A DNA stretch of 64,000 nucleotides, taken from contig NIVC01001568.1 of NCBI GenBank assembly GCA_002269645.1, positions 186,001-250,000 of the forward strand. The letters run 5' to 3'. Below the pieces are notes generated by a model. The model made no database searches. It was given only the letters and a program-made list of their open reading frames with translations, and was not told the DNA's origin. A program made the position numbers and the translations under genes. This document shows positions 13,973 through 54,807 of the stretch, one piece after another. Numbering within the stretch: position 1 is the stretch's first letter; every line of letters begins with the position of its first letter. The DNA is from Macrostomum lignano. Taxonomy: Eukaryota.

Positions 13973-14432
13973 TATTATTGGACTTTGAGTGGATTGATGA
14001 GCAGGCCTGCGCCTCCCGGCTGCAATTATGCGTTTATTAATCAATCTAGTGTAGGGGTGTCCGCGCAATGTTTATTTTCAATCTCCTCTATCAATTTCTT
14101 AGCCAGGAGTTGTGTACCGTCTTGGGAAACTTTCTACTTGTAATCGAATGGTGCAAGTTTCATAAAGATTGGTTGAGCAGTTTTTTTCTAAAATAAATCA
14201 CACAAATAGAAACAAATAGTAAACAACTCATTTTTAGTATATAGGAAGGAAATAAAACTAGCAATCTGCGCCCCCATTGTGGGGCAACAAAGAATAAAAT
14301 ATATATTTTTTAATAAACTATTAATAGCTTTTAACCTTGTACAGTTAACACTGCTAGTTTCTTATGAAAACATGATGTTTAAAGCAAACAAGCATCAGCC
14401 CTGAAAACCAGCTATCTAGCCTAAGATATCAG

Positions 14433-15394
14433 CAGTGATGGGCACCACTAAATTTATTGTTAGCGCCACTAATTAGCGCTGTCACAAACTGATAGAAGAA
14501 AAAAATCAGCGATTGCTAATAGCAAGCGCTATTTCTACTTTGAATTTAGCGCAATCAGAGCCACTAATAGTAAATTTGCTAATTAATGAATACATTTAAT
14601 ATAAACTTCTGTTTCACACATATTTATGCATTTTTTCACATTTTTAACTCACATGTTGTAAATGAAAAAAGCTAATAAAGCTATTGCTAATAATTTGTTT
14701 TTATTGTCAATCCTGATAAAAAATCCTCAAACCACTGAACTGTCAGAGCAATAGTTGGTAGAAAGAGTTCCTAAATTACAATGCTGTTTGCCTTGAAAAC
14801 ATCAAGGGCCTGTGCTACTGGAGCTTACACTCAAGAAGGAACCTTATACTCAAGAAGGAAAGCGAGATCATCAGCTTGAAACAGTGGTACAGGATTTATT
14901 AACCCCACCATCACCCTAATGATATAGCCTGTCATTTTGCATCATCACTTAGAATATCAACTGAGTTGAATGTTGAATTCTTTGATTAAATTATTAAATT
15001 AAATTAAATTAATCAACAACTTTTTGCTAACAAATTAAAAGTAGTAAGAAAACTTTTAAAACTTAATGACAAAAACAAGATTAATTGAACTATGAACTTT
15101 GTTCTTTGAACTTCTAAGAAAATTAGAAACATTAGAGATTTAGTATAGGAAGATTATATAATATTTTACTTATTACTCAAATAGGGTCTCATTTTAAGTA
15201 TTAAGCAGTCATTAACTGTCTAGTTTTATAGCAAAAAATGAATTTAGCGCAATTAGCGATTTTCAGAAAATATTAGTGGCACTTTGATAGCACACACTAA
15301 TTGGAATTTCAATTTAGCGGAATTAGCAGTGCTAACAAAACATTAGTGGCACTTTAGCAGAATTCAAATTTAGTGGTGCTAGTGCCCATCACTT
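14433..15394. mobile_element. Non-autonomous hAT-type MITE (962 bp)
   Basis: Inverted termini CAGTGATGGGCAC...GTGCCCATCACTT with inner ACCACTAAATTT / AAATTTAGTGGT; 8-bp TSD GATATCAG / GATATTAG; repeated subterminal TTAGCG motifs. Confidence 0.8.
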
Positions 15395-15821
15395 GATATT
15401 AGCATCTAATTTAAACCCTATAATGCTAAAAAAACTTATTGCACATACATATGCTAAATACGGAAATACAATAAAAACACTAAATTAATGAACTGAGAAA
15501 AATATAAAATAAAACATAAAACAATAAAGACCTGAATTTGTATAGCCATGATTTCCAATACAGGATCCTACACTAATCTGAGGCTATTTGGATTTTGGAG
15601 CTTTAGCAGGTTTAAATTTAATTTTTTAAATCAACAAGAAGCACTTAAACAAATAAAGTTAAAGATTTTGTGAATGCTAGGATAGTGGACTCAGTATATT
15701 TGTTGTTAAACTTTACTTGCAAAGAATCTATTTATACCATATTAGTTTTGCTTTCATATTATCTTTTATGCAATATACTTATATCTAGACAACTCTTTGC
15801 AACATTTTAGTGCTTAGTTGA

Positions 15822-16110
15822 CATACATGCGCAACAGTCGGCCGAGTTGGCCGACTGATTTGGTGGCCAACCAAGGAAGTCACAAAAATACCCACCCAAA
15901 AAATTACCAAAGTAGTAGTACTAAGTAGCTGATGAGGCATTTTGGCTTAATAAGACAGTCATAGTTACTCCTGCTGTTTACCCAAAGTTGCGTTAATTTT
16001 GCTTTAGGGTTTTTTTACATGTAAGTTGCATTTTTGGCCAAAAACTACGTCGCATTTTTGTTAAAACTAAGTCGCATGGCCGACCGAATTTTGGAGGTTG
16101 CGCATGTATA
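15822..16110. mobile_element. MITE (289 bp) with 8-bp TSD (hAT or P superfamily)
   Basis: Termini CATACATGCGCAAC...GTTGCGCATGTATA; exact TSD TTAGTTGA at 15814-15821 and 16111-16118. Confidence 0.8.
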
Positions 16111-16891
16111 TTAGTTGATCAGTTTTGTAACAAATTCATTTGTATCATATTATCAGGATTGACCAAGCTAGCCAAGTATTTTACATATATGCCTAGCCTT
16201 GCTACCCAATTTTTATTAACTTCCTTAGTTGTTTTAGCCTAAATCTGCCTTATAAATTTCAGTGGCTAATGTACATTATGGCAAAACTAATAAGCAAGCT
16301 TTTTACAACTATAAGCTTGGCTTTTTAACTTATCAAAGTTATCTCAGGTGCCTTTATTCTTATAAAATAGCTTATATACTCTTCACAACTTATTGAACTA
16401 AAAATAGAAAGCTGTTTTGTTAAGTCTATGCCTATGTTACTACTGAGTGGCTCATTTAGTTATTTTAGCATCTGTGGGCCTAAGTAAAAAGTTGGCAATC
16501 TCCTAGTTTATTGTGTTGAATAAATTTTTAAGTTTTTCCTAAATTGTTTAGCTAATTAGCCAACTCTGTAATGGTTAAAAGGCCTAGAGCACTAACTACC
16601 ATAATCTTTAAAGCTAACTGCCAAGCTTATCAATATCAATATCAACCTATAGGAGCCCACACTACTGATAGCCAACAATATGAGCTATTCACTAGTTGGC
16701 CATGTATACTAATATGGCTATATAGGGATAGAATATGGCATGAACAAGGACATGATGGATGATGGTTCTTATCCTAAACTGCAATAAATAGATGTTGCTA
16801 CCTATTATCTAGCAGTATGTCTTTCAATGGCCTTGTTCTTCAATCAATGGCAGGTATAAAAAGGCCTACAATGGCCTGCCAAATAGTATCT

Positions 16892-17528
16892 ACATTTTGG
16901 TACCCAGTATTTTGGTGCCCTAGTTTGCTTTTTGTTGCCTAAATTATAGGCCTCAATTAGAATTAGAAACAAAATAGAAATTTAGCCCTAAATTATTGCT
17001 TGATTGTTTGATAATTGCTTTGCAATCAAAAATAAAATCATTGCTTCTCATTTTGTTGAGCTAATCTATTTTTTTATTTTTTGAAAGTTTTTTTTCATAA
17101 AATTTTTGTCCTAATTTGTCAAAAAATCATAACATAATTACATGTTAGATGTTACTTAAGAAAACAAATCAATATTAAAAGAGATTTGTCACATTTCATA
17201 ACTTTGATCAAAACTATATCTATAATATTATGTATAATGTAGCATCATTAGTAGTTAGTTATATTATGTTACCTAAATCTTCTTAGCACATATTTAAAGT
17301 GCAGCCTTGTATGCATAGATAAATAGCAAATGCAATTAGGCCTAAACATTAATGGATATTTCAAAATCAAAGAAACATGTCAGTTCAACAAAATGGATAC
17401 TGCTTTTAATCATTAAGAAAAAATTTTTGTAGAAAATTTATTAGAATGTTAGAAGACTATTTTATTATTTAGATATCATAAACTTCATAAACTAAGGCAC
17501 CAAAAAGCAATCTGGGGTACCAAAATGT
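16892..17528. mobile_element. Degenerate inverted-repeat element (probable MITE)
   Basis: ACATTTTGGTACCCAG..TTTTGGTGCCCTAG is mirrored by CTAAGGCACCAAAA..CTGGGGTACCAAAATGT. No TSD seen. Confidence 0.45.
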
Positions 17529-17782
17529 CAGGAACCAAAAAGCATGGAAACCTGCTAAATGCTCAAACCATGCCACCATGAACTAGAAACTATAGCCTAT
17601 ATTTTGTGGACCCAAATGACCTAACAATCTACACTAACACTTAGAGGTCTTAGGCTCATATCAAGGAAAAGTTTAGGGCCATGCATGGCACCTTAGATGT
17701 TCTCTTTGAGCGCCACCTCAACAAATATCTACGGCTTTGTCTGTTTCTAGAAGAGGTCTTCAAAAACTTCTTGTACCCAGTA

Positions 17783-18328
17783 GGAATCCAGTCCATTTCG
17801 GCGACAAACCATTTCAGTGACACCCATTTCGGCGACAGGTCAATTCAGCAACAACCATTTTGGCAACAATTCTTAAATAGGATTTTGAATGTTTTTTATC
17901 TCATAGAACTTTATCTTATCTCATATCTCATAGTCCTCTACAAGCTTTTTTCTTGTCATTTCTTAAAACATTAATTTCTTATTAGGCCCCCCTATAATTC
18001 ATTTGTTTTACTGTACTTTTGGTATCTAAACTAAATGTCCATCAGTGTCCAGGTTTTATAGGCCTACTGTCTAAAGTGTTGATTAGGTTTTATATTAAAA
18101 ATTTTAACATAGTTTTAACAAAGCTTTTAAAGTTTAATGTAAAGTTTTACACTATAATTTGTTTTAACAACATTTAAACAAAGGGTGTTAATTTGTATAA
18201 GTTCTGAAATTTTTTGTTGCTATGAGATAAAAAAACATTAAAAGTCCTATTTAAGAATTGTCGCCAAATTGACCTGTCACTAAAATGGGTGTCGCCAAAA
18301 TGGTTTGTTGCCAAAATGGACAGGTACC
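17783..18328. mobile_element. MITE (546 bp) with ~90-100 bp internally repetitive TIRs and GG...CC ends
   Basis: Left GTCCATTTCGGCGACAAACC...AATTCTTAAATAGGA is the reverse complement of right TCCTATTTAAGAATT...GCCAAAATGGAC; 4-bp flanking repeat AGTA. Confidence 0.8.
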
Positions 18329-20387
18329 AGTAGCTCACTATTTTTATTATTAATTGATTTAACACTTACCCGACACTTATAATATGCCTGCTGCTACTCA
18401 TATTCCACCTGGTATGACCATCTCTGTGTGAAAAAAAACTGAAAAAATTAACATAGCAAACTAGGAGATAGACAAAAAGTTAGGCCTATGGCTATATCAA
18501 AATAGCCTAGTAGGCCTAAAGTAAAAAACATTTTTGCAAAAATGATCACAGTGACAGTGTCTAGTAAGAAAAATGCAACAGAAAAAAATTAAGATACAAA
18601 ATTATTAATTGTTCCCTCCCTTTTTAATTTTGTTTTCGTTTTTGTTGGTGGCAATTTTTGTGGCTATTCAACTTTTGCTCTTTGGCTTTGGCTCTTAGTC
18701 TAGAGCAAACTAATAATCCATATTAGATCATAATCCATATTAAGCTTAAGCTTAATAGGCCTAACTGTCACTGACAACCACAGATTTAGTTAGTTGTAGG
18801 TTTATGATATGTTGTAGCATCTTATCAGTAATGTTGAAACTAACCACGCGCACGTCGACTGGTAATTATGTAAACGTAACTATTTAATTTAACAAGTCTA
18901 TCCTCAGCTCAAGATATAATTTTTGTACGTGCGATCCGATGATGGTCAGCATTTTGCTTTTTTTAAAAATTTAATCAATTTAACAAAATAAATGTTTGGC
19001 TCTCTTAATTTAAAAAAAAAATGTACTTAACTAGATTTTTTGAAAGAGAAATTAATTAAATAAATTATTCACAGTTGTTTTTATATTAACTAATTACCAA
19101 TTGCCGATTACATTTATTCATTTTTTAATTGAACCACCACAAATGCCTACCTAAAGCTTTGCTTTAAATGCCCTTTTTCTGGTTACTTCTTTTTTAAAAA
19201 TATATTTTATTTTTAAATGCCTAATATTGCCAGCAATCCTTATATACTGGTATATTATTTATTATTGATAGGTTAATATACTTGAACTACCTATTTGAAT
19301 CATGTTTTGAATGAATCGCTTTCTATCAAGTTCATACAGTACCTGTCATACAGTATCCCTACTTAATACCTTGTCATTTGTTGTTAGTCGTTGTTAGTCG
19401 TTAAAGTTCGATAATACCGTTAAAAAAATTTACAGATGCGTTTTCAATCATAGTTTTTTTACAAATTATTACATGTAAATACACTGCCTTTTATTGGCCA
19501 AACAGGCTCCCAGCCTGAGCCTAACTTACCAACTTACTTACACGCGTTTCAGGTTTACTGATGTAAACTTTTAATACTTTTTCGCAATTCGAAAATCAGC
19601 GGTTCCACGCACGCGTGCCGGGTATTCTGATGTTACATGTATATCCAATAAAAAAGTGTGCAGGTGGTCCCTACATGTAAATAATTTATGCGAATGATGC
19701 TAAAAAATATCCTAGCTAATTTTTTTTACACTAATTCACGACGGACGACAGCCTACAGTTTCGTGAGGCAGATTTAAGTCTTTGCACAGTCTACGGTGAC
19801 AGTGTGCACCATTGCTTGTGCACCAGTCCATCTTATAAGAAATCATTATGTTAAGCATGCAAATTAAGAGCCAGACTGGCGCTTTGGCGCGGTCACAGGC
19901 AGTTAAGCGGCTAAAGTAAGCTAAATATTAGTCTAACGATCTCCGAAAGTGATCGCAATGCATCTACATCATCGCTATCCGTCGACGCGTTAACACATTT
20001 AGTGCCAAAAGCGTGCAGTTATGTGTACTTTTACATGTACTTCTGGGAATTTGGTAATGAAATAGTACATTTAGTAGTGTATGAAGGCTCGCCAGCGCAA
20101 GAACCCTCTGCAAAAGTCCTCTCTGTCCCTGCATGGCCAATGCGACCTTAGCCCCAGTCCCTAAAGCAAGTTGAAGCAAGTTGAAGCAACATGTTTTGTA
20201 AGTTATATCAAAATAAGAGCTTTGTATCTGCTTCCAATAAAAAGCTATCACACCATTTTAAATTGAAAAAAGTGAAAAGTTCCTATCTCGCTAGTGCATT
20301 TTTCCGTGAAAATCAGCCTTTAATAAATTTTCCAAGAAACGAAGTGTCCCGTCCTTCTTCTTCTAGTGGTCCTTGATTTCAAAGAGC

Positions 20388-21472
20388 AGGACGATTAGCA
20401 AAAGTTCAAATGCCATAGACAAATGTACAGCATTGAAAAATCACTTATGGCACACACAAGCGAAATAGCTGGAGCAGGCTTTAACCACTCTTCAACTCTT
20501 GTTATAATACGTCGATCTTGACGAAATTGATTTGCCGTTCGACCAATTATTTATGGATATGGAGTCAGCTCATGCGACAAGAGTCAATAGCTATGACACA
20601 CCCTGCGAGACCGCTTGGTAATAAAACTGACGGCTGAAGATCTACAACGACATCTGGACGACACCTGGAAGGCTTGACTAATGGCTGAGAATCCTCAGTG
20701 ATGGCGCTGCCCCTAGAACTGATTCGTCTTGTTGTCTCCAGCTCTCAACAGATTGACGTTCGCGTTGAACCTCTTGGATCGACAGGTCAGGATACTGTAC
20801 CACCTGCTGAAAAAAACAAAAGGTTCTATCGAGGTGGAGATTGCATGACGGTGAGAGGGTTGTAAGGTTTTTTTAAGTGATTGTAGTAAAAAATTCAATG
20901 AACTTTGTTTGAAGCTAATTGATCAAACTGTTATTTGCTTTATCTTGTTTATTTGCTATTTTGTACTAAATATATTTGCCATCGTGAAGACACTTTTGTT
21001 TTACGTTTTTACGGCCCAGTGCATGTATCAAGGTACCAATGTACCTAAAATCACAAAAATGCATGACACAGCTCCAATATTTGGTTTTATGAATCTATTT
21101 TATCATCTCTGTTACGAATATTTGCTACACAGTCAGTTAAGAATGAAAAAATAGATTCATAAAACCAAAGAGCCGAGCCGTGGCATTCTAATGTATTTCA
21201 AGCACAAGACACGTGAAAATATACGTAGAATAAAAAATTAACATAGAATCCTAATTTTCTGAACGAAAAGCTTTATAAATATCGATAGAGCAATAAAAAA
21301 GGGACAGCATATCAAAAGATAAACACTGGATCTGCTTCCTATCAAAAGTAATAGCAATTTTTGTGCTGAAAAAATGAAAATTTCCCATCTCCGTAGTGTA
21401 TTTTTCGGGAAAAAGTGCCTTCAAAAATTTTCTAAGAAACGAGGTTTCCCGTCCTTTTACTTAAGTCGTCCT
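20388..21472. mobile_element. Probable non-autonomous DNA transposon with AGGACGA...TCGTCCT termini
   Basis: Imperfect TIR. Its right ~100 bp resemble 20270-20373 and, inverted, 31325-31380. No TSD seen. Confidence 0.4.
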
Positions 21473-23129: not shown

Positions 23130-23519
23130 CTTGGAGCGGTCTCTGTGCTGGAAAAAACAGAACTTTAAAACGCATAGTTTGCAGATTGATTGATGCGACG
23201 TCTTGCTAAATGCTGCCGTATAAGCGGTCATATTTTACAGCAGCCTCTTAATTATTAAGCAAGAAAGACCAATACTGAAAATTAAAATGTGAAGGACACT
23301 ACTTTAAGTACAATGGCATTCGACTCTAATATTTTTAACGGATTTTTACACCAGTCACCGTTCCTGCAGTCTGTTTCCACACCAGAATTGGCCCTGCAGT
23401 CGGCGACTCCAGCTGGCAGCCTTTCAGTTCATCCGTGCCAAGTCGTACTGCGCTTTCAGGCGGTTTCAAAAGGTGCCGCTGTGGCTGACGCTAACGTTTC
23501 GTCGACTGCCCGCCCTCGA

Positions 23520-24530
23520 TTCTGTCACCCCAGAGTGCCCGCCCCTGAGTCTGTCACCCCAAGACTGGCCGCCCCTGAGTCTGTCACCCCAGAGTGCCCG
23601 CCCCTGAGTCTGTCACCCCAGACTGGCCGCCCATGGGTCTGTCACCCCAGACTGGCCGCCCCTGAATCTGTCACCCCAGAGTGCCCGCCTCTGAGTCTGT
23701 CACCCCAAGACTGGCCGCCCCTGAGTCTGTCACCCCAGAGTGCCCGCCCATGGGTCTGTCACCCCAGACTGGCCGCCCCTGAATCTGTCACCCCAGAGTG
23801 CCCGCCTCTGAGTCTGTCACCCCAAGACTGGCCGCCCCTGAGTCTGTCGCCCCAGACTGCCCGCCCCTGAGTCTGTCACTCCAAGACTGGCCGCCCCTGA
23901 GCCTGTCACCCCAGAGTGCCCGCCCCTGAGTCTGTCACCCCAAGACTGCCCGCCCCTGAGTCTGTCGCCCCAGAGTGCCCGCCTCTGAGTCTGTCACCCC
24001 AAGACTGGCCGCCCCTGAGTCTGTCGCCCCAGACTGCCCGCCCCTGAGTCTGTCACCCCAGACTGCCCGCCCATGGGTCTGTCACCCCAGACTGCCCGCC
24101 CATGGGTCTGTCACCCCAGACTTCCCGCCCATGAGTCTGTCACCCCAGAGTGCCCGCCCCTAAGTCTGTCACCCCAGACTGCCCGCCCATGGGTCTGTCA
24201 CCCCAGACTGCCCGCCCATGGGTCTGTCACCCCAGACTTCCCGCCCATGAGTCTGTCACCCCAGAGTGCCCGCCCCTAAGTCTGTCACCCCAGACTTCCC
24301 GCCCCTGAGTCTGTCACCCCAGACTGTCCACCCCTGAGTCTGTCACCCCAGACTGTCCACCCCTGAGTCTGTCACCCCAGACTTCCCGCCCCTGAGTCTG
24401 TCACCCCAGACTGTCCACCCCTGAGTCTGTCACCCCAGACTGTCCACCCCTGAGTCTGTCACCCCAGACTGTCCACCCCTGAGTCTGTGACCCCAGACTG
24501 TCCACCTCTGAGTCTGTCATCCCAGACTGT
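23520..24530. repeat. Minisatellite, 24-25 bp unit (CTGAGTCTGTCACCCCAGACTGCCCGCCC-like)
   Basis: Direct tandem copies; explains ORFs 23289-24279. Confidence 0.97.
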
Positions 24531-25154: not shown

Positions 25155-25410
25155 TATACCTATGTCAAACATGTGAGATACCAATGTCAAACATGGGAGA
25201 TACCTATGTCAAACAGGTGGCATACATGTCTCAAACAGGTGAGATACATGAGTCAAACAGGTGGCATACATGAGTCAAACAGGTGGTATACATGAGTCAA
25301 ACAGGTGAGATACATGAGTCAAACAGGTGAGATACATGAGTCAAACAGGTGAGATACATGAATCAAATAGGTGGTATACATGAGTCAAACAAGTGACATA
25401 CGTGAGTCAG
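25155..25410. repeat. Minisatellite, 22 bp unit (GAGTCAAACAGGTGAGATACAT)
   Basis: Direct copies. Confidence 0.92.
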
Positions 25411-26452
25411 AGTGTGTAACGAGTTTAAAACGATTCAAGCCAGTTTATCTCTCCCATGCGTGTAAGTTAGTCCAGGCTCGTACCGAAAGAGAACATTGAT
25501 AGCAGTCCAAGTTTCTTAGTTCAGTTCTCATCTCAAGCCAGACAGACATCGAAGTCCTAAGGGAGTTTTTTATTTTTTGCTAAGCATTTTTGGAGCAGAG
25601 CGCCCTGTCAGTCACGGCCGACATGATACAAGGGCCGCAGACTGACAGGAAGTCGGTCGCAAATTGAATCGAGTTTTGCCATTAGAGGCAGCCTGCCACA
25701 TCCGGTGCCGTCCATGCTGGTCATTGGCCAGTCTTAGGGAGCCGCCAAGTCTTCCCTTGTTCCCCAGCTCTATTCATCTTTCTCCTCAGGTAAAACCTCG
25801 CGCAGGAAATGCGCAGATCTGTGAATTATTCGCGCATCTGCCGATGAGTGCCAGCCGGCCTGTTGATCTGACGTCGCATCTTGAAGACTCTCGCAGTGCA
25901 CCTGCCAGCCATCACATTCTAAGGCATTCGAGGTACATTTAGCTCGTAGTAACCATTTGCTGCAGTACGTCATTAGCTGTCGTTTTCAGTCAAATCTCTC
26001 CAGAATACAAGCATTTTTTCTTTCTTTGAATTCCCTATTGATGAAATTTTGTTAACTCTGGCTCAACATTTTGTCCGGAATCTGGTGTGCCCGTTGAGTG
26101 ACTAGTACGAAAAACTGCGCCCGCCAGCAAATCGACGCATTTGAGGGGAGAAAAAACAATCCAAGCCGCTTCATCGGAGACTTTCCTATTTTGACATGTC
26201 CGAAATTCGGGAGGGGAGGGCGGGTGCGCTGAGCTGCCTTTTGGCGGACCCGAGCTCCTCATGCAGTCTGGAGAAATATCCCAAAACAGCGCGGTTCCCT
26301 CTGGCGGGCTTAGCAGTCACTCCGGGAGGGCGGGCTTGTAGCAATCCTGCCAGGAGCTTACACACCGCTTCCCGGCCGCAGGAGCTAAAATCCGGACCAA
26401 ATCTGGGTCGAGCAAACTTCCACCTGCATTGCAGACAAGTTGCCCGCGTCTC

Positions 26453-26460
26453 TATATAAG
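26453..26460 (+). promoter_or_regulatory. TATA box of the neuropeptide precursor gene
   Basis: TATATAAG 260 bp upstream of the ATG, followed by a probable non-coding first exon ending CAAG|GTAATT near 26588. Confidence 0.6.
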
Positions 26461-26712
26461 AACTCAGCAGAGCGGCCGTCTCAGCCGCCTTTTTCGGTCG
26501 AGAGAGAAGCAATTAGCGTAGTCGCTTGAAGGTCTCCGCCTGCCCGGGCTCCACAAACGCACTGACACACTTAGAAGAGAACGCCAAGGTAATTAATAGC
26601 TTTCAAATCTTCTTTCCTTCTTTGCATGTTTTCAATTCAGTTCTCTACGTGTTGAATTATCCTGTACAGTACGAGCGTAACTGCTTCGTAACAACTTAGA
26701 GCCGGATCTGCC

Positions 26713-27637
26713 ATGGTGCATCCAACAAAAAGCCTGCTGATTGTCGCTGCCTGCCTTGCCGTCGCTTACGGATCCAAGGTGAGCAGGTTAACCAGCTCGT
26801 CAATGAGTTCACTGAGAAGAAAATTGTGCACGAAACTTCGTCTCAAACTTTCAGGCTGCCGGTGGTCACGACGTTGACAAGAAGAGCAAAGGCTTTGAAA
26901 AAAGGTCAAATCCTCTCGTCGACTCCGGCCCGAACTATGAGTACGCCAGCCTTCAACATCCGTACGGCATGAAACGCTTTGACCCACTGTACGGCATGAA
27001 GCGCTTTGACCCACTGTACGGCATGAAGCGATTCGACCCACTGTCCGGCATGAAGCGCTTTGACCCACTGTACGGCATGAAGCGCTTTGACCCACTGTAC
27101 GGCATGAAGCGCTTTGACCCACTGTACGGCATGAAGCGCTTTGACCCACTGTACGGCATGAAGCGATTCGACCCACTGTCCGGCATGAAGCGCTTTGACC
27201 CACTGTACGGCATGAAGCGCTTTGACCCACTGTACGGCATGAAGCGCTTTGACCCACTGTACGGCATGAAGCGCTTTGACCCACTGTACGGCATGAAGCG
27301 CTTTGACCCACTGTACGGCATGAAGCGATTCGACCCACTGTCCGGCATGAAGCGCTTTGACCCACTGTACGGCATGAAGCGCTTTGACCCACTGTACGGC
27401 ATGAAGCGCTTTGACCCACTGTACGGCATGAAGCGCTTTGACCCACTGTACGGCATGAAGCGCTTCGACCCACTGTCCGGCATGAAGCGACTCGACCCTC
27501 TGTCCGGTATGAAGCGCTTTGACCCACTGTCCGGTATGAAGCGTTTTGATCCTCTGTCCGGCATGAAGCGTTTTGATCCTCTGTCCGGCATGAAGCGTTT
27601 TGACCCTCTGGCCAGCATGAAGCGGTCAAAGAATTGA
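26713..27637 (+). CDS. Neuropeptide prohormone (282 aa); exons 26713-26778 and 26855-27637; 24 KR-flanked heptapeptides (15 FDPLYGM, 7 FDPLSGM, 1 LDPLSGM, 1 FDPLASM); pedal peptide/orcokinin-like DPL motif
   Basis: GCCATGG start; signal peptide MVHPTKSLLIVAACLAVAYG; 76-nt phase-0 intron AAG|GTGAGC...TTTCAG|GCT joins in frame to the repeat ORF; dibasic KR between every peptide. Confidence 0.93.
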
Positions 27638-28144
27638 CGAAAAACAGTCAATAACTAATAAAAAACGAATACTTGACCAGCATATAGTGTTTCCGTGTGT
27701 CCTAGGAACTTTCCACTCAAATAGACACGAGGTTAGCATCGCTTCATTCATGATGAATGTCTCAGAAGACTGGAATGCTTGTTGCTAATGACACGGGAGT
27801 TTTTTCTGAGTTCTTTTGTCTCTACCAGCTGGAAGCAACCTAGTTGTGTTCTGTACTTTTGCGGTGCAAGGGCAACCCGCTCTTCGTCCCGCATGAGGAA
27901 GTGCACCATCATTTATTTTTGTTTTCGGCCTAACTTTGGCGTGTAGGCTGCGGGATGAGGGTCGTTCGACTGGGGATTGATTGGCTGGGCTCTTTCTGCG
28001 GTGTGATTGGCTGACGTAAGGTTGGGCCGGTCGGGAGAGACTGTGGGTGGGGTGGTGAGCTTGAGGGCTTGCAGCCTCCCCCCCCCCGACGCGAGCGCCT
28101 GCTACGAGGCGAGGTAGTTTCGCTGCTACTTGCGTCGCCACTCG

Positions 28145-28902: not shown

Positions 28903-31900
28903 CTACAGACCAGAATCCTGAAGCTGGTATCTGAGTGAGTGCATTCGAAACACGAGGGCAGAAACGTGCTGCGCTATCTGTTTCCATATCTCTGTCTCGT
29001 TAGACCGCTTCTTGGCCACCGCCAGGAGGTCCTGAAGGCCCGGGAACCCGGCCGAAATTTCCGTCTCCTCCGTCTGGGAGGAGAACACCAGATTTCGCAG
29101 CGTCTTGTCGCGCAGCAGAGCTCCAGGATCCGCTAGCGTCTGCATGACCCGCATCCGACGATCGTTGAAGCCGCGCACCGACATCGGATCGATGTCCTCA
29201 CTGCCCGCGTCGATGCGCTCCTGCAGCTGCTGCACTGCCGAGCCAAGCCGGGCGCTCTCAGCCTCCAGAGCTGTCAGCGCGCTATCGAACTCTTTCCAAG
29301 TGTCGTTCACGTACTTGTCGTACTTGGCCGCGCTCGCGGGCCAGCCCCACTGCGACGGTGGAGTGGCAGAGTTGAAGCGATTTCGAATGTTCGCAATCAA
29401 AGCGGCCTCGTCGTACGGGAGAAGCCAAGTTTCGGACAACAGTCGCAGCATCTCAACGCCCCAGATGGCCACCTCGCCGTGAGCTCGCAGGCCAGGATCG
29501 ATAATACTCTCCATCACGGGCAGCGTTTCGTACATCGAATGATACAGCGGGTAGTACGAGCTGTACTTCGGATCGGCCACGTAGCTCGCATCGATAATCG
29601 GTACTGCAGCCGTCTGTATGAAGGCGGAGTAGTCGCTGGAGCCAATCGGAACGCTGAGCCTGTAGTCTTGGTCTAGCCAGCGTCTCTTAAACTCCTCGAA
29701 CATGGTCCCGCCGTCCTGGGCCGGCAGGTTTTTCAACGCCTGCAGGGCCGCCTCCTGGAGCAGCGGGTCTGCATTCGTACGAATTGAGTAGTTTCCACGC
29801 ACTGCGATGTCGATGTTGATGTAGGCTACCACTTTCTAGACAAGGAAGTAAAGAATGTGGGACAGCTTCCTGTTTGTGTACGCTATCATTAGCTCCTGTA
29901 CTCTAAACAAATTCTTAAAAAGAAGTTTTCTCATACCTCCCTAATCTGCGGAAGGCGATCTTCCACCCATTCCCAGCTGCCGGTGATGCCCTGCTCCTCG
30001 ACGTCCCAGCTACACAGAAGGATGCTGCGCCGCGGTCGCCAGCCGTCAGAGTAGAATTGGCCGAGCATTCTGGCAATTTCCAGCAGCACCGCGCTGCCAC
30101 TGGTGGCATCGACCGCCCCGGCACCCCAAGCATCGCGGTGATTGCCAAGAAGGACGTATCTGTAGACATTGCAAGTAAAAAACATCCCATTATGCCTGTA
30201 GGCTCTATTCAGGGGGAATTCACATTGTTAATTGAGCATTATACTACTACAAACGCAGCCTTTTTAGACCTGTATCCGTTTTTTTGCTCATTAAGTCTAA
30301 TACAGTAAGCTTCTCTGTCAATTGGTTCGAGAATATATCGCTGTGAACTGCGTCTGAAGTGTTGCCATGCGAGTCTACCTTTAGGCACAGTTAATTACGA
30401 GTGTAGTGTATCACTACAGCTATATCAGCTTTGATTAACTATTGCAAGCTTGTAAATACCAAGCATTACTCGCAGCGGCGAAGTGTGACGGAGAACTCAA
30501 ATTATTATCAGACTCCCGAACCAAAAATGGTAAAAACCGCACATTTGGAACCAATTAAAAGTCAAATCACCTGTCCGGTTCCAAGTCGCCTTTCATCTCC
30601 GCAAACACATTCACCGCGTTGACACCTTCCAAGATTCGATTATTGACAACTAGTCTGGCATGATCCACGCCAGGTGCAAAGCTGCCTCCAGCTCGATAGT
30701 CGATGGGCAGGCCGCCCTTTACGTACGAGCTGATGTTGGCGCCCTCGAGTACGCCCAGCAGCTTCATGGCGTCTCCGTAGCCAACGGGATAGCCTGGAAT
30801 CGGGGAGAAGACCGGCGGATCCGTTTGCTGTTTGATTTCGTCGAATTCGTCGCGATAGGCGAACGGCAGCGAGGGATAGGCGGGGGTCTGCGGGTCGGCC
30901 TGGCGCATTTTGGCGCTGCCGCGTTGAACGCCAGTGGGCGGCAGCCACCAGGAGTTCGGGTAAACGTCGTCAAGCCTGCCCGGCACCGCCCAGCCGTCGG
31001 CAGGGTCGGAGTAAACGATGCCACCAATGCAGCCGTAGGCGGCCGCGTTGACAAGTTTCTTGCCGCGACCGACGCCACCGTAGCGCATGAGGGCGATGGC
31101 GCCGCTCAGAGTGACGTTCAGCTGCTGCAGATACTCAAAGTCGCGCTCTCTGCCGTAGTTTGCGAATACGACTAGGCCAGAGACGTTTCCCGAGGGCGTG
31201 AAGGAGAGGATCGGTGGCACCTGTCAGATTTAGCGTGGGTAGCAGGAATGAATATACCGGTAAATAATGTTGTGCCTTTCTTATTGCTCTATCGATATTC
31301 ATAAAGCTTTTCGTTCAGAAATAGTTTTAAAGGCAGGTTTCACCGGAAAAATACACCACGGAGATGGGAAATTTCACGATTTTCAACACTAAAACAGTGA
31401 TTGGGTCTCTTAACAGTGTCAGAGAAAGTTCTAATCACACTGTTTTGTGCCTCACATTCTGCTCTAACGACACATTAATCGATTTTTCATGTTAAATTGG
31501 TCTTGTCATTTTTAAACGTTTTTTAAGTGAAAAAAGTGCATCGCAATACGCTCACACAGAGTGTACAGCGAGCCTGACTTTCTAATCTGTAAAGTCTCTG
31601 TGCCTTAAGGACTTTTTCCTCATCGGTGGGAGTCGCACAAAAACTTATCGTCCCATTTTCGCGTACAAGCCCCAAACGAATGTGGCCGCGCACCGAATCA
31701 AGGGTCCGGGGGTCGTAGCAAAGGTTCAGGTGCGTTTACCACTAAGCTCCACTGCGACCCCTTCGAAGCGGAGGTCTGATCTCTGCACATTCGCATACCT
31801 CAGTGATGAAAGAAATCAGGACGATGGCCTACTCAGGTAGCAATATGATGTAGCGCTTCAAAAGTTACAAACCGACTTTATGTGGAAAGTGGAAGCTCAC

Positions 31901-33508: not shown

Positions 33509-35559
<2,051 letters not shown>

Positions 35560-36550: not shown

Positions 36551-37049
36551 TGTCGCCTACACAAGTCAACAGTGTTGGAACTTATAAAGATTTTCGCGCA
36601 AAATCGAGAGATATTTACTTGAATTGATGGAGGCCTGAATAAATCTAACAACACTCATTTTTATTTATTACAATTGTACTCGAATCTGTGTGTACATCAG
36701 TAGAGTTGCATGGCAAAGACTAAGAGACCAAGCCACCCTCCTGGTTACGAGAACATTGTCACTGCGCTGTTTATTAGAACCTTTGTGCTCACTGGGGCCG
36801 CCGACTGCCTCATACACACGGGTTGCGTGTTTTATCGATAGATAGCTCCATGAAGCAGTGCGGTTACGTCACTGTGCAGACGGGCAATCTCGCCACGCTG
36901 TCTAATAGCATAGGGGCCTATCGTGTACGCGCTACACAGTTCCAAATGAGTATAAAGGCGCTGGACAGCTGACTTGCCGATTGGATCTAGCAAGTTGCAT
37001 ATTTGACTCGTCACTGTTTGCTGAGACAACGAGAATCTTTATATTTGGA

Positions 37050-39839
37050 ATGTTTCTGTTGGGCATTGGGCTGCTGTGCCTGACGCTTTCTGTGCCCAGG
37101 GCTGCACCAGCTCGACAGGAGTCCGAGGTGACTTCACCGGCCGCAACAACTGCACCTGCTGCTGCTTCGGGTTACAGCTCTATTCAGGTAGAATCAAGCA
37201 CAAATGCACCAGCTCCAAATGAGTCCAGGTTGACTGCACCGGCCGCAACAACTGCACCTGCTGCTGCTTCGGGTTACAGCTCTATTCAGGTAGAATCAAG
37301 CACAAATGCACCAGCTCCAAATGAGTCCAGGTTGACTGCATCGACCATACCTGCACCCGAAACTACTACATCATCTGACAACTCTGCTTGGAAAGAATCA
37401 ACCACAACTGCACCTGCTGCTGCATCAATTCAATTTGAGTCCATGTTGAATGACGCATCAACTACAACTGCACCAGCAACTCCACCAGCTCATAAGTCTA
37501 CTTTGAGAGACTCTACCAAAATTGTACCTGCCACTGCATCAACTCGAGTTCAGTCCAATTCGACTACTCCAACCAAATCTGCAACCGACAATACTGAATC
37601 AGCTGACGAGTCGTCGTGGACAAAATCAACTGCAGCTGCTCCTGATGCTGCATCGGCTCGGTTAGAGTCCGACTTCACTGCATCAGCCACAACTGCGCCT
37701 GTTGCTGAAAGTGCTCACGAGTCCACTTCAACAGCGGCACCTGTTTCGTCGTCTTTTACCATAGCGAAGCCCCATCGGGGTGAAAGTCCATCGAGTCCAA
37801 CAGCGGAGGCCACGGGTCGCTGCGGCCTGCTAATTCGCAGCAACCTGTACCGGTGCAGCGACCGGCCCAACTGGTGGCTGTCAAAAGCCGACCTGAACGA
37901 GTTGAAACTTCGGCTGCTTGCGGGCCAATCGGAGTCCATCTGCTGCCGGGACTGGCGGAATCAGGCCATCTATTCGAACCTGAACCAGCACCGGGACAGC
38001 GCGGCTGGCTCCCGGATGCGAATCAACTGCCCCCTGGCACTGGCCACCAGTCAATCTTCCCTTGACGCCTTGACAACAGTTGTGACTGGCTCGGAGCTGC
38101 ACTGCTACAATCTGTGCAACACAACCCTAGCCCTGGGCGATGGCGGCCGCACGCACTATAACTTGTTCCTGCCGATCCAATATGCGCCCGTCAAATGTCA
38201 ATGGCGACTCAAAGGCGTGAGTAAAGTCGTCATCAGGTGAGCAGTCTCATTCTTTTTAGATGCTGTATGAGCTTGCAAACAATACCGGTGTTACCGAGTG
38301 ACAATATGACCGAGTAACAATATGACCGAGTGACAATATGACCGAGTAACAATATGACCGAGTGACAATATGACCGAGTGACAATATGACCGAGTAACAA
38401 TATGACCGAGTGACAATATGATCGAGTGACAATATGACCGAGTGACAATATGACCGAGTGACAATATGAACGAGTGACAATATGACCAAGTGACAATATG
38501 ACCGAGTGACAATATGACCAAGTGACAATATGACCGAGTGACAATGTGACGCAATACAAAGCATTAACCGTCAATAAACATAATTTTCAGCAAGAGCCAG
38601 ATGCAGGCCTGGGATCAGCTTCGCCCGTTCCTGTGCCTGTCGGACGGGACTCGCCTCGGGCTTGCGGTTCGGAGCGCGCATCTGGTCAGGTATATCCGCT
38701 GACCAGCTCGGCAACTGAAGTTCTGCAGTGCCGCAGTGGCGACTGCCTTCTATGGTACGATTGGAGATCAGCGATCGCGTCTCAGCGCCGGTTTGACTTT
38801 CGCAGCTTAAAAGTGGAGCTTTTTGGCTGGGCTGCAGTGAGTTTTTGAGTTTTTCTATTCAAGTTTCCGCTAACTGCCTGCATTGTCTACGGGTCTTCTG
38901 GTGCGCCCGCTATGGCACCTCTGTAAATCTGCACCTGTCTGTTCCCTATTCGGACATCTCTTGGCATTGATGCCAGTCTGTTTTCATGCCCTCAAAAAGT
39001 ACACCAAATACCTGACAATTGAAATTGCTCCTTCCTTGCTAGCTAGTGTTAGTAATAGCCACTGCACTTACATTTGGGGAACCTCAGCGACTTTCGAATA
39101 AAAGTACACAAGGTTCGATTCCGTGAGCGGCCACATTTATTTGGGGCCAGCGCGCAGAGACCATTGATCACGATTGAGGTTTTTTGTGCGGTTTACCCCC
39201 ATGAGGGCCAACCCCGTGCTCTGGGTCAGCGGATTGGAGTGTGTGCTGGCCGACCGTCGCTTTGATTAGCCCCAGGCCTCCTGAAAACTGGCCCAATAGC
39301 CGCTACATTCGCCTCCCACCCAGCCCACTTCCGGACCAGAGGCGCCCGCTCTGCCGCAGCAGCGAACACCCCGGCCAGCCTCTCTGACGACTGCCGCAAC
39401 ACCGACAGCAGCCGGAAGCCGCCCAGCCGGCCCGCCCTCACAGCCGCCGCTGCCGAGGTCCTCGGAGAAATTCCCACTGGAGTTCCGCGTCACCCGCGGC
39501 GTGATGGCCGGCGTCACGGCTGCCGCGGTGGCGCTGATCTGCGCTGCCGCCTGCATCTGGGGCTGCCGCAGCTGGCACTACCGCATGTACAGCTCGCCGC
39601 TGCGCCGCCTCCTGGGCCGGACGCCGCTGCACCGCCTGCCGACCTACTCCAGCCGGCTGTTCGACCTCGAGCAGCTGCGACTCGACCAACCGTGCAGCGC
39701 AAAGGAGGCGCCCGACGCTTCCGAAGCCACGCCTTCGTCGTCGGATGAGGAGGACGTCGACGAAGAGGAAGACGACGGGGTGGAGGAGATCGACATGATG
39801 ATGGAGCTGGTCGCGGGTGAGGTTCCGCGTCGGGCTTAA
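37050..39839 (+). CDS. Orphan type I membrane protein: signal peptide, S/T/A/P mucin-like stalk, Cys-rich region, TM, acidic tail; tentative exons 37050-38216, 38591-38836, ~39300-39839
   Basis: MFLLGIGLLCLTLSVPRAAPA signal; a 34-aa internal duplication; two phase-0 GTGAGT donors; TM VMAGVTAAAVALICAAACIWGC; tail DEEDVDEEEDD. The exon 3 acceptor is uncertain. Confidence 0.65.
38295..38548. repeat. Minisatellite, 17 bp unit (TGACAATATGACCGAG-like), intronic
   Basis: Direct copies. Confidence 0.95.

Positions 39840-42762: not shown

Positions 42763-54807
<12,045 letters not shown>

What the first reader, a model, noticed from the sequence alone, without database searches (positions are those of the whole stretch)
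26453..27637. Neuropeptide precursor with 24 KR-flanked FDPL-type peptides hidden in what looks like a 27-bp minisatellite
Seen: a TATA box, a signal-peptide exon absent from the ORF track, a 76-nt intron, then peptides FDPLYGM x15, FDPLSGM x7, LDPLSGM and FDPLASM. A longer first peptide SNPLVDSGPNYEYASLQHPYGM shares the YGM end. None has a C-terminal Gly, so they should be non-amidated. Units 3, 8 and 14 share the synonymous signature CGA TTC, showing block duplication of 5-6 units. Established: FD/DPL cores in non-amidated multi-copy peptides are typical of the pedal peptide/orcokinin family, which affects muscle and cilia. The short 7-mer ending in GM is not a peptide I recognise.
Basis: partly seen in the sequence, partly recalled or inferred. 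Interest (0 to 1): 0.72.

Follow-up and report, generated by a model that had tools for sequence, protein, structure and literature searches.

The report
Flatworm multi-copy pedal-peptide-like precursor gene
The 27-bp "minisatellite" is the coding body of a real gene of the flatworm Macrostomum lignano. The gene encodes a secreted precursor carrying 24 copies of a 7-residue peptide that resembles pedal-peptide/orcokinin neuropeptides: a sound but fairly ordinary new member of a known family, and only a truncated version is present in the protein databases searched.

Summary
There are 24 in-frame 27-bp units (26972-27619), each reading KR plus a heptapeptide: FDPLYGM x15, FDPLSGM x7, LDPLSGM and FDPLASM. 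They are preceded by a 22-mer ending in YGM, and a 76-nt GT-AG intron joins them to a signal-peptide exon (26713-26778).

The only database relative is UniRef A0A1I8FZM5, a "Secreted protein" of Macrostomum lignano. It is 100% identical, uses the same 26778/26855 junction, and stops inside the repeat.

Seven of the 11 variants among the units are synonymous in the KRFDPLYGM frame (P = 0.003). KR is kept at all 26 sites while using five different Arg codons.

The core matches peptides detected by mass spectrometry in other animals: planarian PPP-1 (YDPIGGGLL) and starfish ArPPLN1b (FDPLSAGFTD). The similarity is at motif level only (BLASTP E = 0.064).

Best reading: a pedal-peptide/orcokinin-like prohormone, cut at KR and not amidated.

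Not shown here: transcript 5' end, expression site, processing, receptor.

Novelty is modest: a new member of a known kind, with unusually short peptides.

The parts
26453..26459 (+). TATA-like box (TATATAA). It is the candidate core promoter, with a transcription start inferred about 30 nt downstream.
   Evidence: Only TATA[AT]A[AT] match in 25400-26720. Function is inferred and not tested.
26483..26588 (+). Candidate non-coding first exon (5'UTR). Its 5' end is approximate.
   Evidence: Ends at the donor gccaag|GTAATTAA. When spliced to 26700 it contains in-frame stops and no upstream ATG. Inferred only; no transcript data were available.
26589..26699 (+). Candidate 5'UTR intron of 111 nt. 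Its acceptor (...AACAACTTAG|agcc) is also the acceptor used by the public gene model.
25790..25932 (+). Alternative upstream exon used by the public model A0A1I8FZM5 (P0001). It is joined to 26700 across 767 nt.
   Evidence: tblastn of the P0001 N-terminus is 100% identical. The exon is preceded by the acceptor ctcctcAG and followed by GTACAT. It carries an in-frame ATG at about 25845, which would bury the signal peptide.
26713..26778 (+). Start codon and signal peptide, MVHPTKSLLIVAACLAVAYG|SK. The Kozak context is gccATGG.
   Evidence: The hydrophobic core LLIVAACLAVA has a mean Kyte-Doolittle hydropathy of 3.09. Small residues sit at -3 (A) and -1 (G).
26779..26854 (+). 76-nt GT-AG intron inside the coding sequence.
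   Evidence: The junction is used by P0001 (...AYGSK|AAGGHD...). It corrects the one-frame offset between the exons.
26855..26905 (+). N-terminal propeptide AAGGHDVDKKSKGFE followed by KR. It contains a KK site and a KR site.
   Evidence: Translation.
26906..26971 (+). First, longer peptide SNPLVDSGPNYEYASLQHPYGM, which shares the YGM end of the repeat peptides.
26972..27619 (+). 24 units of 27 bp, each KR plus a heptapeptide: FDPLYGM x15, FDPLSGM x7, LDPLSGM, FDPLASM. There is a higher-order 5-6 unit block structure, and units 19-24 are the most diverged.
   Evidence: Seven of 11 variants are synonymous (P = 0.0026).
27620..27637 (+). Final KR, C-terminal tripeptide SKN and the TGA stop.
27657..27662 (+). 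AATAAA polyadenylation signal, 20 nt after the stop codon.

Best explanation

Proposed mechanism:
1. A cleavable N-terminal signal peptide takes the protein into the secretory pathway.
2. A prohormone convertase (PC2-type) cuts after each of the 26 Lys-Arg pairs.
3. A carboxypeptidase removes the basic residues.
4. About 24 acidic, non-amidated heptapeptides are released (FDPLYGM, FDPLSGM and two variants), plus one 22-mer.

The peptides carry the aromatic-Asp-Pro-Leu-x-Gly core of pedal-peptide/orcokinin (PP/OK)-type peptides. I read the gene as the macrostomid counterpart of planarian ppp-1/ppp-2, but with peptides shortened to the core. It is most likely expressed in neurons or secretory cells and acts on a still unknown receptor to modulate muscle and/or cilia.

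The array itself grew by recent unequal exchange of 5-6 unit blocks. It therefore behaves like a minisatellite while staying under purifying selection at the protein level.

What is shown: gene structure, reading frame, the selection signature, the motif match and the species.

What is inferred: processing, cell type, physiological role and promoter.
For: - Species and gene model. The only hit among 5.8 billion proteins is UniRef A0A1I8FZM5, "Secreted protein", M. lignano. It is 100% identical and contains the junction AYGSK|AAGGHD. Its first seven repeat units come in the same order as in the window.
- Frame logic. The repeat frame is open only from 26816 and has no ATG before 26969. Exon 1 would stop at 26875 if left unspliced. 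The frame offset of 1 equals 76 mod 3.
- Selection. There are 10 variable columns carrying 11 variants. Seven are synonymous in frame +0, where 21% is expected (binomial P = 0.0026). The other five frames give 1-4 synonymous changes.
- Conserved residues. K, R, D, P, L and M never vary. KR is kept at 26 of 26 sites while Arg uses AGG, CGC, CGA, CGT and CGG.
- Signals. A signal-peptide-like N-terminus, a Kozak context of gccATGG, and AATAAA 20 nt after the stop.
- Family motif:
  - Schmidtea PPP-1 peptides GAYYDPIGGGLL and RSFYDPIGGGLL and PPP-2 peptide SYFDKIGSDLL are KR-flanked, non-amidated and detected by mass spectrometry. They fall to about half after pc2 RNAi (PMC2953531).
  - Starfish ArPPLN1b is FGGKGAFDPLSAGFTD, Aplysia pedal peptide is PLDSVYGTHGMSGFA, and orcokinin is NFDEIDRSGFGFN (PMC5656890).
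  - BLASTP aligns the units in register as [FY]DP[LI]xG..[LM]KR.
- Motif background. [FYL]D[PSEK][ILV].{0,3}G occurs 23 times in the array and 7 times in the other ~128,000 six-frame residues. FDPLS occurs 0 times outside the array.
- Processing enzyme. M. lignano has a pc2 homologue with an RNAi phenotype (PMC4490696).
Against: - No transcript, expression or peptidomic data could be reached. Both exact-sequence look-ups found nothing.
- The alignment to planarian PPP-1 is not significant (E = 0.064, 34% gaps). The alignment to another PP-like precursor, P0151, is worse (E = 2.1). No Pfam family matched.
- Known PP/OK peptides quoted here are 11-18 residues long and mostly end in G-F or L-L (one starfish peptide, ArPPLN1e, ends in PLVA). 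These are 7 residues long and end in G-M.
- No orthologue from another species was found, so conservation over evolutionary time is untested.
- The public model carries a 52-aa N-terminal extension with an in-frame ATG. If that form is real and translated, the signal peptide would become internal.
- The surrounding DNA is extremely rich in minisatellites, many free of indels.
- The synonymous-bias test treats variants as independent, although block duplication has copied some of them.
Confidence: 0.75

Rival explanations
1. It is a lineage-specific secreted peptide family that only converges on the PP/OK motif. The gene and its processing are real, but the heptapeptides are not orthologous to pedal peptide or orcokinin and may use a different receptor.
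For: - The alignment to planarian PPP-1 is not significant (E = 0.064).
- The peptides are about half the usual length and end in Met.
- No orthologue was found.
- The loose PP/OK motif has a background of about 5e-5 per residue. Across dozens of neuropeptide families, some motif match by chance is not negligible.
Against: - FDPLS is an exact 5-residue match to starfish PP-type peptides, and 0 occurrences are found elsewhere in the window's six-frame translation.
- Precursor architecture, absence of amidation and KR spacing are all the same as in planarian ppp-1 and ppp-2.
- A search with Smed PPP-1 found no other M. lignano protein that could fill the PP slot, although that search is limited by its word index.
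Confidence: 0.17
2. It is a secreted gland product rather than a neuropeptide. One option is that the acidic heptapeptides act outside the body, as a pheromone or as a component of the "small negatively charged" releasing secretion of the duo-gland adhesive organs. Another is that the uncut, KR-rich protein is a structural or seminal secretion.
For: - There is a signal peptide and a highly repetitive body, and no expression data are available.
- The peptides are small and acidic (pI 4.05).
- The adhesion model for M. lignano postulates an unidentified small negatively charged release factor, and KR-rich regions occur in the adhesive protein Mlig-ap1 (PMC6410801).
Against: - The same paper reports a low protein density and PAS-positive polysaccharide in the releasing vesicles.
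- Net charge is only about -1 per peptide.
- Strict KR at every junction, together with a PP/OK core, is the hallmark of prohormones cut by PC2 in flatworms.
- At 282 aa and with Asp balancing part of the charge, the protein is unlike the more than 3,600 aa of KR-rich regions in Mlig-ap1, which have a reported pI above 14.
Confidence: 0.06
3. It is a neutral, non-coding minisatellite that happens to be open in one frame next to a chance signal-peptide-like ORF. On this view the public gene model is an ab initio artefact.
For: - The window contains about 30 minisatellite arrays, several with periods divisible by 3 and no indels.
- All three minus-strand frames of this array are also open.
- The public model is a truncated fragment with an odd N-terminal extension.
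Against: - The synonymous bias is specific to frame +0 (P = 0.0026).
- KR is invariant at 26 of 26 sites despite five different Arg codons.
- A unique, non-repetitive coding region lies upstream, containing dibasic sites and a related first peptide.
- The intron length restores the frame exactly.
- The stop codon comes right after the last unit, and AATAAA follows 20 nt later.
- No other array in the window gives a KR-punctuated open frame except this array's own antisense and a simple AGAGG tract.
- The array matches a known peptide motif.
Confidence: 0.02
4. The coding strand is the minus strand. That ORF (26953-27651) reads FMPYSGS-KR repeats, which are also flanked by dibasic pairs.
For: The antisense frame is open for 232 aa and shows 20 KR pairs.
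Against: - The only start is TTG, there is no signal peptide, and there is no downstream polyadenylation signal logic.
- KR degenerates to NR or SR in four units.
- Only 4 of 11 variants are synonymous in that frame.
- The public model is on the plus strand.
Confidence: 0.01

Closest known systems
Schmidtea mediterranea pedal peptide prohormone-like 1 and 2 (Smed-ppp-1, ppp-2; Collins et al. 2010, PMC2953531)
   Same: - Both are from flatworms.
- Both have a signal peptide followed by tandem, non-amidated peptides flanked by KR or KRR.
- Both share the core aromatic-D-P-(I/L)-x-G-...-hydrophobic, as in YDPIGGGLL, NDPLGVALL and FDKIGSDLL.
- The planarian peptides were seen by mass spectrometry and fell after pc2 RNAi.
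- The units align in register.
   Different: - The planarian peptides are 11-12 residues long, with a 3-residue N-terminal extension and a GGLL or SDLL tail. There are about 8 copies of them.
- Here the peptides are 7 residues long, start directly at F and end in G-M. There are 24 copies.
- The pairwise alignment is not significant (E = 0.064).
Starfish myorelaxant peptide / ArPPLNP1 peptides (PMC5656890)
   Same: - FDPLS is identical in ArPPLN1b (FGGKGAFDPLSAGFTD) and in ArPPLN1d.
- Both precursors are multi-copy (12 + 7 copies in Patiria) and their peptides are non-amidated.
   Different: - The starfish is a deuterostome.
- Its peptides are 13-18 residues long, with a Gly-rich N-terminal part and a GFTD tail.
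- Its peptides have a demonstrated muscle-relaxant action. No function is known here.
Aplysia pedal peptide (PLDSVYGTHGMSGFA), arthropod orcokinin (NFDEIDRSGFGFN) and C. elegans NLP-14
   Same: - Both start with a hydrophobic residue followed by Asp. LDSVYG can be set against FDPLYG.
- Both are non-amidated.
- Both come from multi-copy precursors.
- The family's receptor is still unknown.
   Different: - Those peptides are 13-15 residues long with a C-terminal GF(x) part that is missing here.
- The roles reported for them (ciliary beating, gut and muscle activity, sleep) are only a lead for this gene.
RTX-type nonapeptide repeats (GGxGxDxLYG), a false friend
   Same: Both have a 9-residue period and a D-x-L-Y-G string. 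This produced 14,884 phmmer "hits", with E-values down to 1e-97.
   Different: - The matches are purely periodic and compositional.
- The hits are huge, unrelated repeat proteins, or other 9-aa tandem repeats sitting inside P450, Gcd10p or Sec63-domain proteins.
- This is not homology.

Membership tests
Pedal peptide/orcokinin (PP/OK)-type neuropeptide precursors | N-terminal signal peptide on the precursor | tested here: met
   MVHPTK, then a 12-residue hydrophobic core, then AYG|S. The hydropathy peak is 3.09 and small residues sit at -3 and -1. This was judged by rule; no SignalP run was available.
Pedal peptide/orcokinin (PP/OK)-type neuropeptide precursors | Several tandem copies of related peptides bounded by dibasic cleavage sites | tested here: met
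   25 peptides separated by 26 invariant KR pairs.
Pedal peptide/orcokinin (PP/OK)-type neuropeptide precursors | Peptides not C-terminally amidated (no Gly before the basic pair) | tested here: met
   Every peptide ends in Met directly before KR. This agrees with the family members.
Pedal peptide/orcokinin (PP/OK)-type neuropeptide precursors | Core motif: hydrophobic or aromatic residue, Asp, (P/S/E/K), (I/L/V), 0-3 residues, Gly | tested here: met
   23 of the 24 units match. FDPLS is identical to starfish ArPPLN1b and ArPPLN1d. The background in the window is 7 matches in about 128,000 residues. I defined the motif from members quoted.
Pedal peptide/orcokinin (PP/OK)-type neuropeptide precursors | C-terminal part after the Gly (G-F-x, or G-x-L-L) and an overall length of about 11-18 residues | tested here: not met
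   The peptides are 7 residues long and end in G-M, with neither an N-terminal extension nor a GF or LL tail. This is a typical feature of the family, not a formally defining one.
Pedal peptide/orcokinin (PP/OK)-type neuropeptide precursors | Statistically supported sequence homology of the precursor to a family member | tested here: inconclusive
   BLASTP gives E = 0.064 against Smed PPP-1 and E = 2.1 against P0151. There is no Pfam model. The phmmer hits are repeat artefacts. Short-peptide precursors rarely pass such tests.
Pedal peptide/orcokinin (PP/OK)-type neuropeptide precursors | Expression in neurons and release as processed peptides | not testable with these tools
   No transcriptome, in situ or peptidome data for M. 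lignano could be reached.
Pedal peptide/orcokinin (PP/OK)-type neuropeptide precursors | Activation of the family's cognate receptor | not testable with these tools
   No receptor is known for the family in any species (PMC5656890; PMC11121805, 2024).
Neutral (non-coding) minisatellite | Substitutions among units spread without regard to codon position, and no functional flanks | tested here: not met
   Seven of 11 variants are synonymous in one frame only (P = 0.0026). The array is flanked by a signal-peptide exon, a frame-restoring intron, a stop codon and AATAAA.

The most novel reading that the evidence does not exclude
The heptapeptides may not be an internal neuropeptide at all. They could be an exported signal or effector made in bulk from a 24-copy precursor. 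One possibility is the still unidentified small, negatively charged release factor of the M. lignano duo-gland adhesive organs. Another is a water-borne pheromone. On this reading the PP/OK-like core would have been co-opted or would be convergent.
Probability: 0.05. Interest if true: 0.75.

Novelty: new member of a known kind. Interest (0 to 1): 0.36.

Why it matters
It gives the complete structure of a peptide-precursor gene that the protein databases searched hold only as a fragment: an unnamed "Secreted protein" that stops in the eighth repeat unit, plausibly because the repeat was not resolved or was masked in that assembly or annotation. Tandem-repeat-rich genomes such as that of M. lignano can therefore hide multi-copy prohormones inside what repeat finders call minisatellites.

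Biologically, the peptides look like the bare core of PP/OK-type peptides. No receptor is known for that family in any animal. A natural 7-residue ligand in a flatworm amenable to RNAi, which I recall also to be transgenic, would be a convenient probe for receptor de-orphanisation. It would also help in testing whether PP-type control of cilia and muscle extends to a worm that I recall moves by ciliary gliding.

The array is also a clear case of minisatellite-style expansion under protein-level constraint.

Tried and rejected
1. A phmmer search of the full precursor against 1.84 billion representatives returned 14,884 hits with E <= 0.001.
   - Inspection showed RTX-like GGxGxDxLYG nonapeptide repeats and unrelated 9-aa tandem repeats inside P450, Gcd10p and Sec63-domain proteins.
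   - I rejected these as periodicity artefacts. P0001 is the only real relative.
2. The word-indexed search of 5.8 billion proteins found only P0001.
3. Exact-sequence look-ups of P0001 and of the 222-aa repeat ORF in the contig collection found nothing. No genomic or transcript context from elsewhere could therefore be fetched.
4. Pfam returned no family for the precursor.
5. A search with Smed PPP-1 found two PP-like precursors from Logan assemblies (P0151, P0152) but no second M. lignano gene.
6. BLASTP of the precursor against PPP-1 and against P0151 was not significant.
7. Literature:
   - The strings FDPLYGM and FDPLSGM occur in no held paper.
   - McVeigh et al. 2009, which surveyed M. 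lignano ESTs for neuropeptides, is not held. I therefore could not check whether this gene was listed there.
8. The bacterial promoter/terminator scan is irrelevant to this eukaryotic locus.
9. Rfam and tRNA scans of the window found nothing.
10. The antisense reading FMPYSGS-KR was considered and rejected.
Full report
**1. What is in the sequence**

The region was read directly and dissected with a script. A 66-nt exon (26713-26778) reads MVHPTKSLLIVAACLAVAYGSK. It is followed by a 76-nt intron with consensus ends (aag|GTGAGC ... TTTCAG|gct). Exon 2 (26855-27637) ends in TGA. The spliced CDS is 849 nt, or 282 aa.

Splitting the product at KR gives these pieces:
- a short propeptide;
- SNPLVDSGPNYEYASLQHPYGM;
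- 24 heptapeptides: FDPLYGM x15, FDPLSGM x7, LDPLSGM x1, FDPLASM x1;
- a C-terminal SKN.

Tandem Repeats Finder calls the array at 26962-27624 with period 27, 24.6 copies, 94% matches and no indels. A degenerate KRFDPL DNA pattern hits 24 times, against 0.26 expected by chance, and nowhere else in the window.

Units 3, 8 and 14 are identical, with CGA TTC and TCC. Units 3-7 equal units 14-18, so the array grew by duplication of blocks of 5-6 units. Units 19-24, at the 3' edge, are the most diverged.

**2. Whether it is more than a chance-open minisatellite**

This question matters because the window carries about 30 minisatellite arrays. Several have periods divisible by three, and many have no indels. 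All three antisense frames of this array are open as well. Openness and regularity therefore prove nothing. Five other lines of evidence do.

(a) Among the 24 units there are 10 variable columns carrying 11 variants. Seven are synonymous in the KRFDPLYGM frame, where 21% would be expected from random single changes (binomial P = 0.0026). The other five frames give only 1-4 synonymous changes. One caveat applies: block duplication copies variants, so they are not fully independent.

(b) K, R, D, P, L and M never change. The KR pair is intact at all 26 sites although Arg is written with AGG, CGC, CGA, CGT and CGG.

(c) The repeat frame is open only from 26816 and has no ATG before 26969. Exon 1 would terminate at 26875 if unspliced. 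The two frames differ by one, which is exactly 76 mod 3.

(d) The ATG has a gccATGG context. The N-terminus has the n/h/c layout of a signal peptide, with a hydropathy peak of 3.09 and A and G at positions -3 and -1. The stop codon follows the last unit immediately, and AATAAA lies 20 nt further on.

(e) A six-frame scan for KR-punctuated open frames found only three things: this array, its antisense, and a simple AGAGG tract.

**3. Outside evidence**

The word-indexed search of 5.8 billion proteins returned a single relative, UniRef A0A1I8FZM5, a "Secreted protein" of Macrostomum lignano (P0001). It is 100% identical and contains the junction ...AYGSK|AAGGHD... It lists the first seven units in the same order as the window, then breaks off in the eighth. 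The window is thus M. lignano DNA, a gene model already uses the proposed splice, and the full-length precursor is absent from the protein databases searched.

The model's 52-residue N-terminal extension maps to an upstream exon at 25790-25932. That exon is preceded by an AG acceptor, followed by GTACAT, and joined to 26700.

That exon joins the same acceptor, leaving a 5'UTR with in-frame stops and no upstream ATG.

The upstream-exon form contains an in-frame ATG that would bury the signal peptide, so I favour the TATA-driven form or trans-splicing at 26700. No transcript data were reachable, so the 5' end remains open.

**4. A search result that must not be over-read**

A phmmer search against 1.84 billion representative proteins gave 14,884 hits, with E-values down to 1e-97. 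The matched segments are of two kinds: RTX-like GGxGxDxLYG nonapeptide repeats, and unrelated 9-residue tandem repeats in proteins with P450, Gcd10p or Sec63 domains. Both the shared period of nine and the D-x-L-Y-G string are coincidental. None of these hits is a homologue.

**5. What it is like**

Planarian Smed-ppp-1 and Smed-ppp-2 (pedal peptide prohormone-like) encode KR-flanked, non-amidated peptides:
- GAYYDPIGGGLL;
- RSFYDPIGGGLL (x3);
- RFYNDPLGVALL...;
- SYFDKIGSDLL.

These were detected by mass spectrometry and fell to about half after pc2 RNAi (PMC2953531).

Starfish PP/OK-type peptides include FGGKGAFDPLSAGFTD and SFVHGDFDPLSTGFVDGD. Aplysia pedal peptide is PLDSVYGTHGMSGFA, and orcokinin is NFDEIDRSGFGFN (PMC5656890).

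The M. lignano peptides thus carry the family core: an aromatic or hydrophobic residue, Asp, Pro, Leu or Ile, one residue, then Gly. FDPLS is an exact match to the starfish peptides, and FDPLYG can be set against LDSVYG of Aplysia. They lack the N-terminal extension and the GF or LL tail.

BLASTP aligns the precursor unit by unit with PPP-1 ([FY]DP[LI]xG..[LM]KR), but the score is not significant (E = 0.064). This is usual for short-peptide precursors.

A motif taken from the quoted members occurs 23 times in the array and 7 times in the remaining ~128,000 six-frame residues. FDPLS occurs nowhere else.

A search with Smed PPP-1 found two further PP-like precursors from read assemblies (P0151, P0152) but no other M. 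lignano protein.

**6. Mechanism**

*Shown:*
- a spliced, signal-peptide-bearing open reading frame;
- 26 conserved KR sites;
- protein-level constraint;
- no Gly before any KR.

*Inferred from established prohormone biology and from the planarian data:*
- entry into the ER;
- cleavage after KR by PC2. M. lignano has a pc2 homologue with an RNAi phenotype (PMC4490696);
- trimming by a carboxypeptidase;
- release of about 24 acidic heptapeptides (pI about 4; [M+H]+ 842.375 and 766.344) and one 22-mer, all non-amidated.

The target is unknown. No PP/OK receptor has been identified in any species. By analogy with molluscan and echinoderm members, an action on cilia and/or muscle is the best guess. 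From my own knowledge, M. lignano moves by ciliary gliding, which makes this a natural thing to test.

**7. Rivals**

- Convergent, lineage-specific peptide family (0.17). This cannot be excluded on a 7-mer.
- Exported gland product (0.06). Options are a pheromone or the postulated small negatively charged release factor of the adhesive organs. That is conceivable because expression is unknown. However, the adhesion study found little protein in the releasing vesicles (PMC6410801).
- Neutral minisatellite (0.02) and antisense coding (0.01). Both are contradicted by the frame-specific synonymous bias, the degeneration of KR to NR or SR in the antisense frame, and the flanking gene signals.

**8. 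Verdict**

This is a real gene, read correctly by the first stage. It is best filed as a PP/OK-like (ppp-type) prohormone of M. lignano with unusually short peptides and a high copy number. It is a new member of a known kind.

The points of interest are:
- only a truncated model is present in the protein databases searched, and the rest sits inside a minisatellite-like array;
- it is a coding minisatellite under constraint;
- its heptapeptide may be a minimal natural ligand for a family whose receptor is still unknown.

I could not check McVeigh et al. 2009 for prior mention. The peptide strings occur in no paper of the held library.

Noticed in passing
window 1-64000 (for example 552-1757, 4607-5711, 11816-13507, 23504-24529, 46841-47873, 49258-49814): The window is unusually dense in minisatellites. 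About 30 distinct arrays have periods of 16-47 bp and up to 89 copies. There are also two long tetranucleotide tracts, (GTCT)n at 33933-34814 and (ATCT)n at 53443-54107. Together they explain the strong local GC and AT skews.
   Followed up: partly
window 25790-25932: The public gene model A0A1I8FZM5 starts with an exon here, spliced to 26700 across 767 nt. Its translation looks like translated UTR rather than protein and contains an in-frame ATG. It could be an alternative first exon, a trans-splice-trimmed transcript end, or a prediction artefact.
   Followed up: partly
window 14000-21000: This is an AT-rich island (GC 0.32, against about 0.50 elsewhere) with almost no long ORFs. Its nature (old transposon, intron or heterochromatic insert) was not determined.
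   Followed up: no
window 13583-14068 (-): This ORF reads like ribosomal protein eS12 (...[64 protein letters not shown]). I identified it by eye from the translation. The frame then runs on into what is probably an intron.
   Followed up: no
window 28903-31220 (-): Two ORF pieces carry a PA domain and a transferrin-receptor-like dimerisation domain. This points to a glutamate carboxypeptidase II / NAALADase-like gene lying tail-to-tail with the peptide precursor. No functional link is implied.
   Followed up: partly
window 40774-41835 (+) and 52209-52901 (-): These are mariner/Mos1-type transposase ORFs with HTH_48, HTH_32 and partial DDE domains. One is nearly full length and the other is a fragment.
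   Followed up: partly
window 60846-63992 (-): A 1048-aa open frame running to the edge of the window carries Helicase_C and OB_NTP_bind domains. It is a DEAH-box RNA helicase gene, apparently without introns over this stretch.
   Followed up: partly
window 36981-38240 (+): A 419-aa ORF overlaps a 102-bp (34-codon) tandem repeat at 37103-37418 and has no Pfam match. It may be another repeat-containing coding sequence.
   Followed up: no
window 26953-27651 (-): The antisense strand of the peptide array also reads as dibasic-flanked heptapeptides (FMPYSGS-KR). This is a reminder that KR-punctuated repeats can appear on the wrong strand. Here KR decays to NR or SR in four units.
   Followed up: yes
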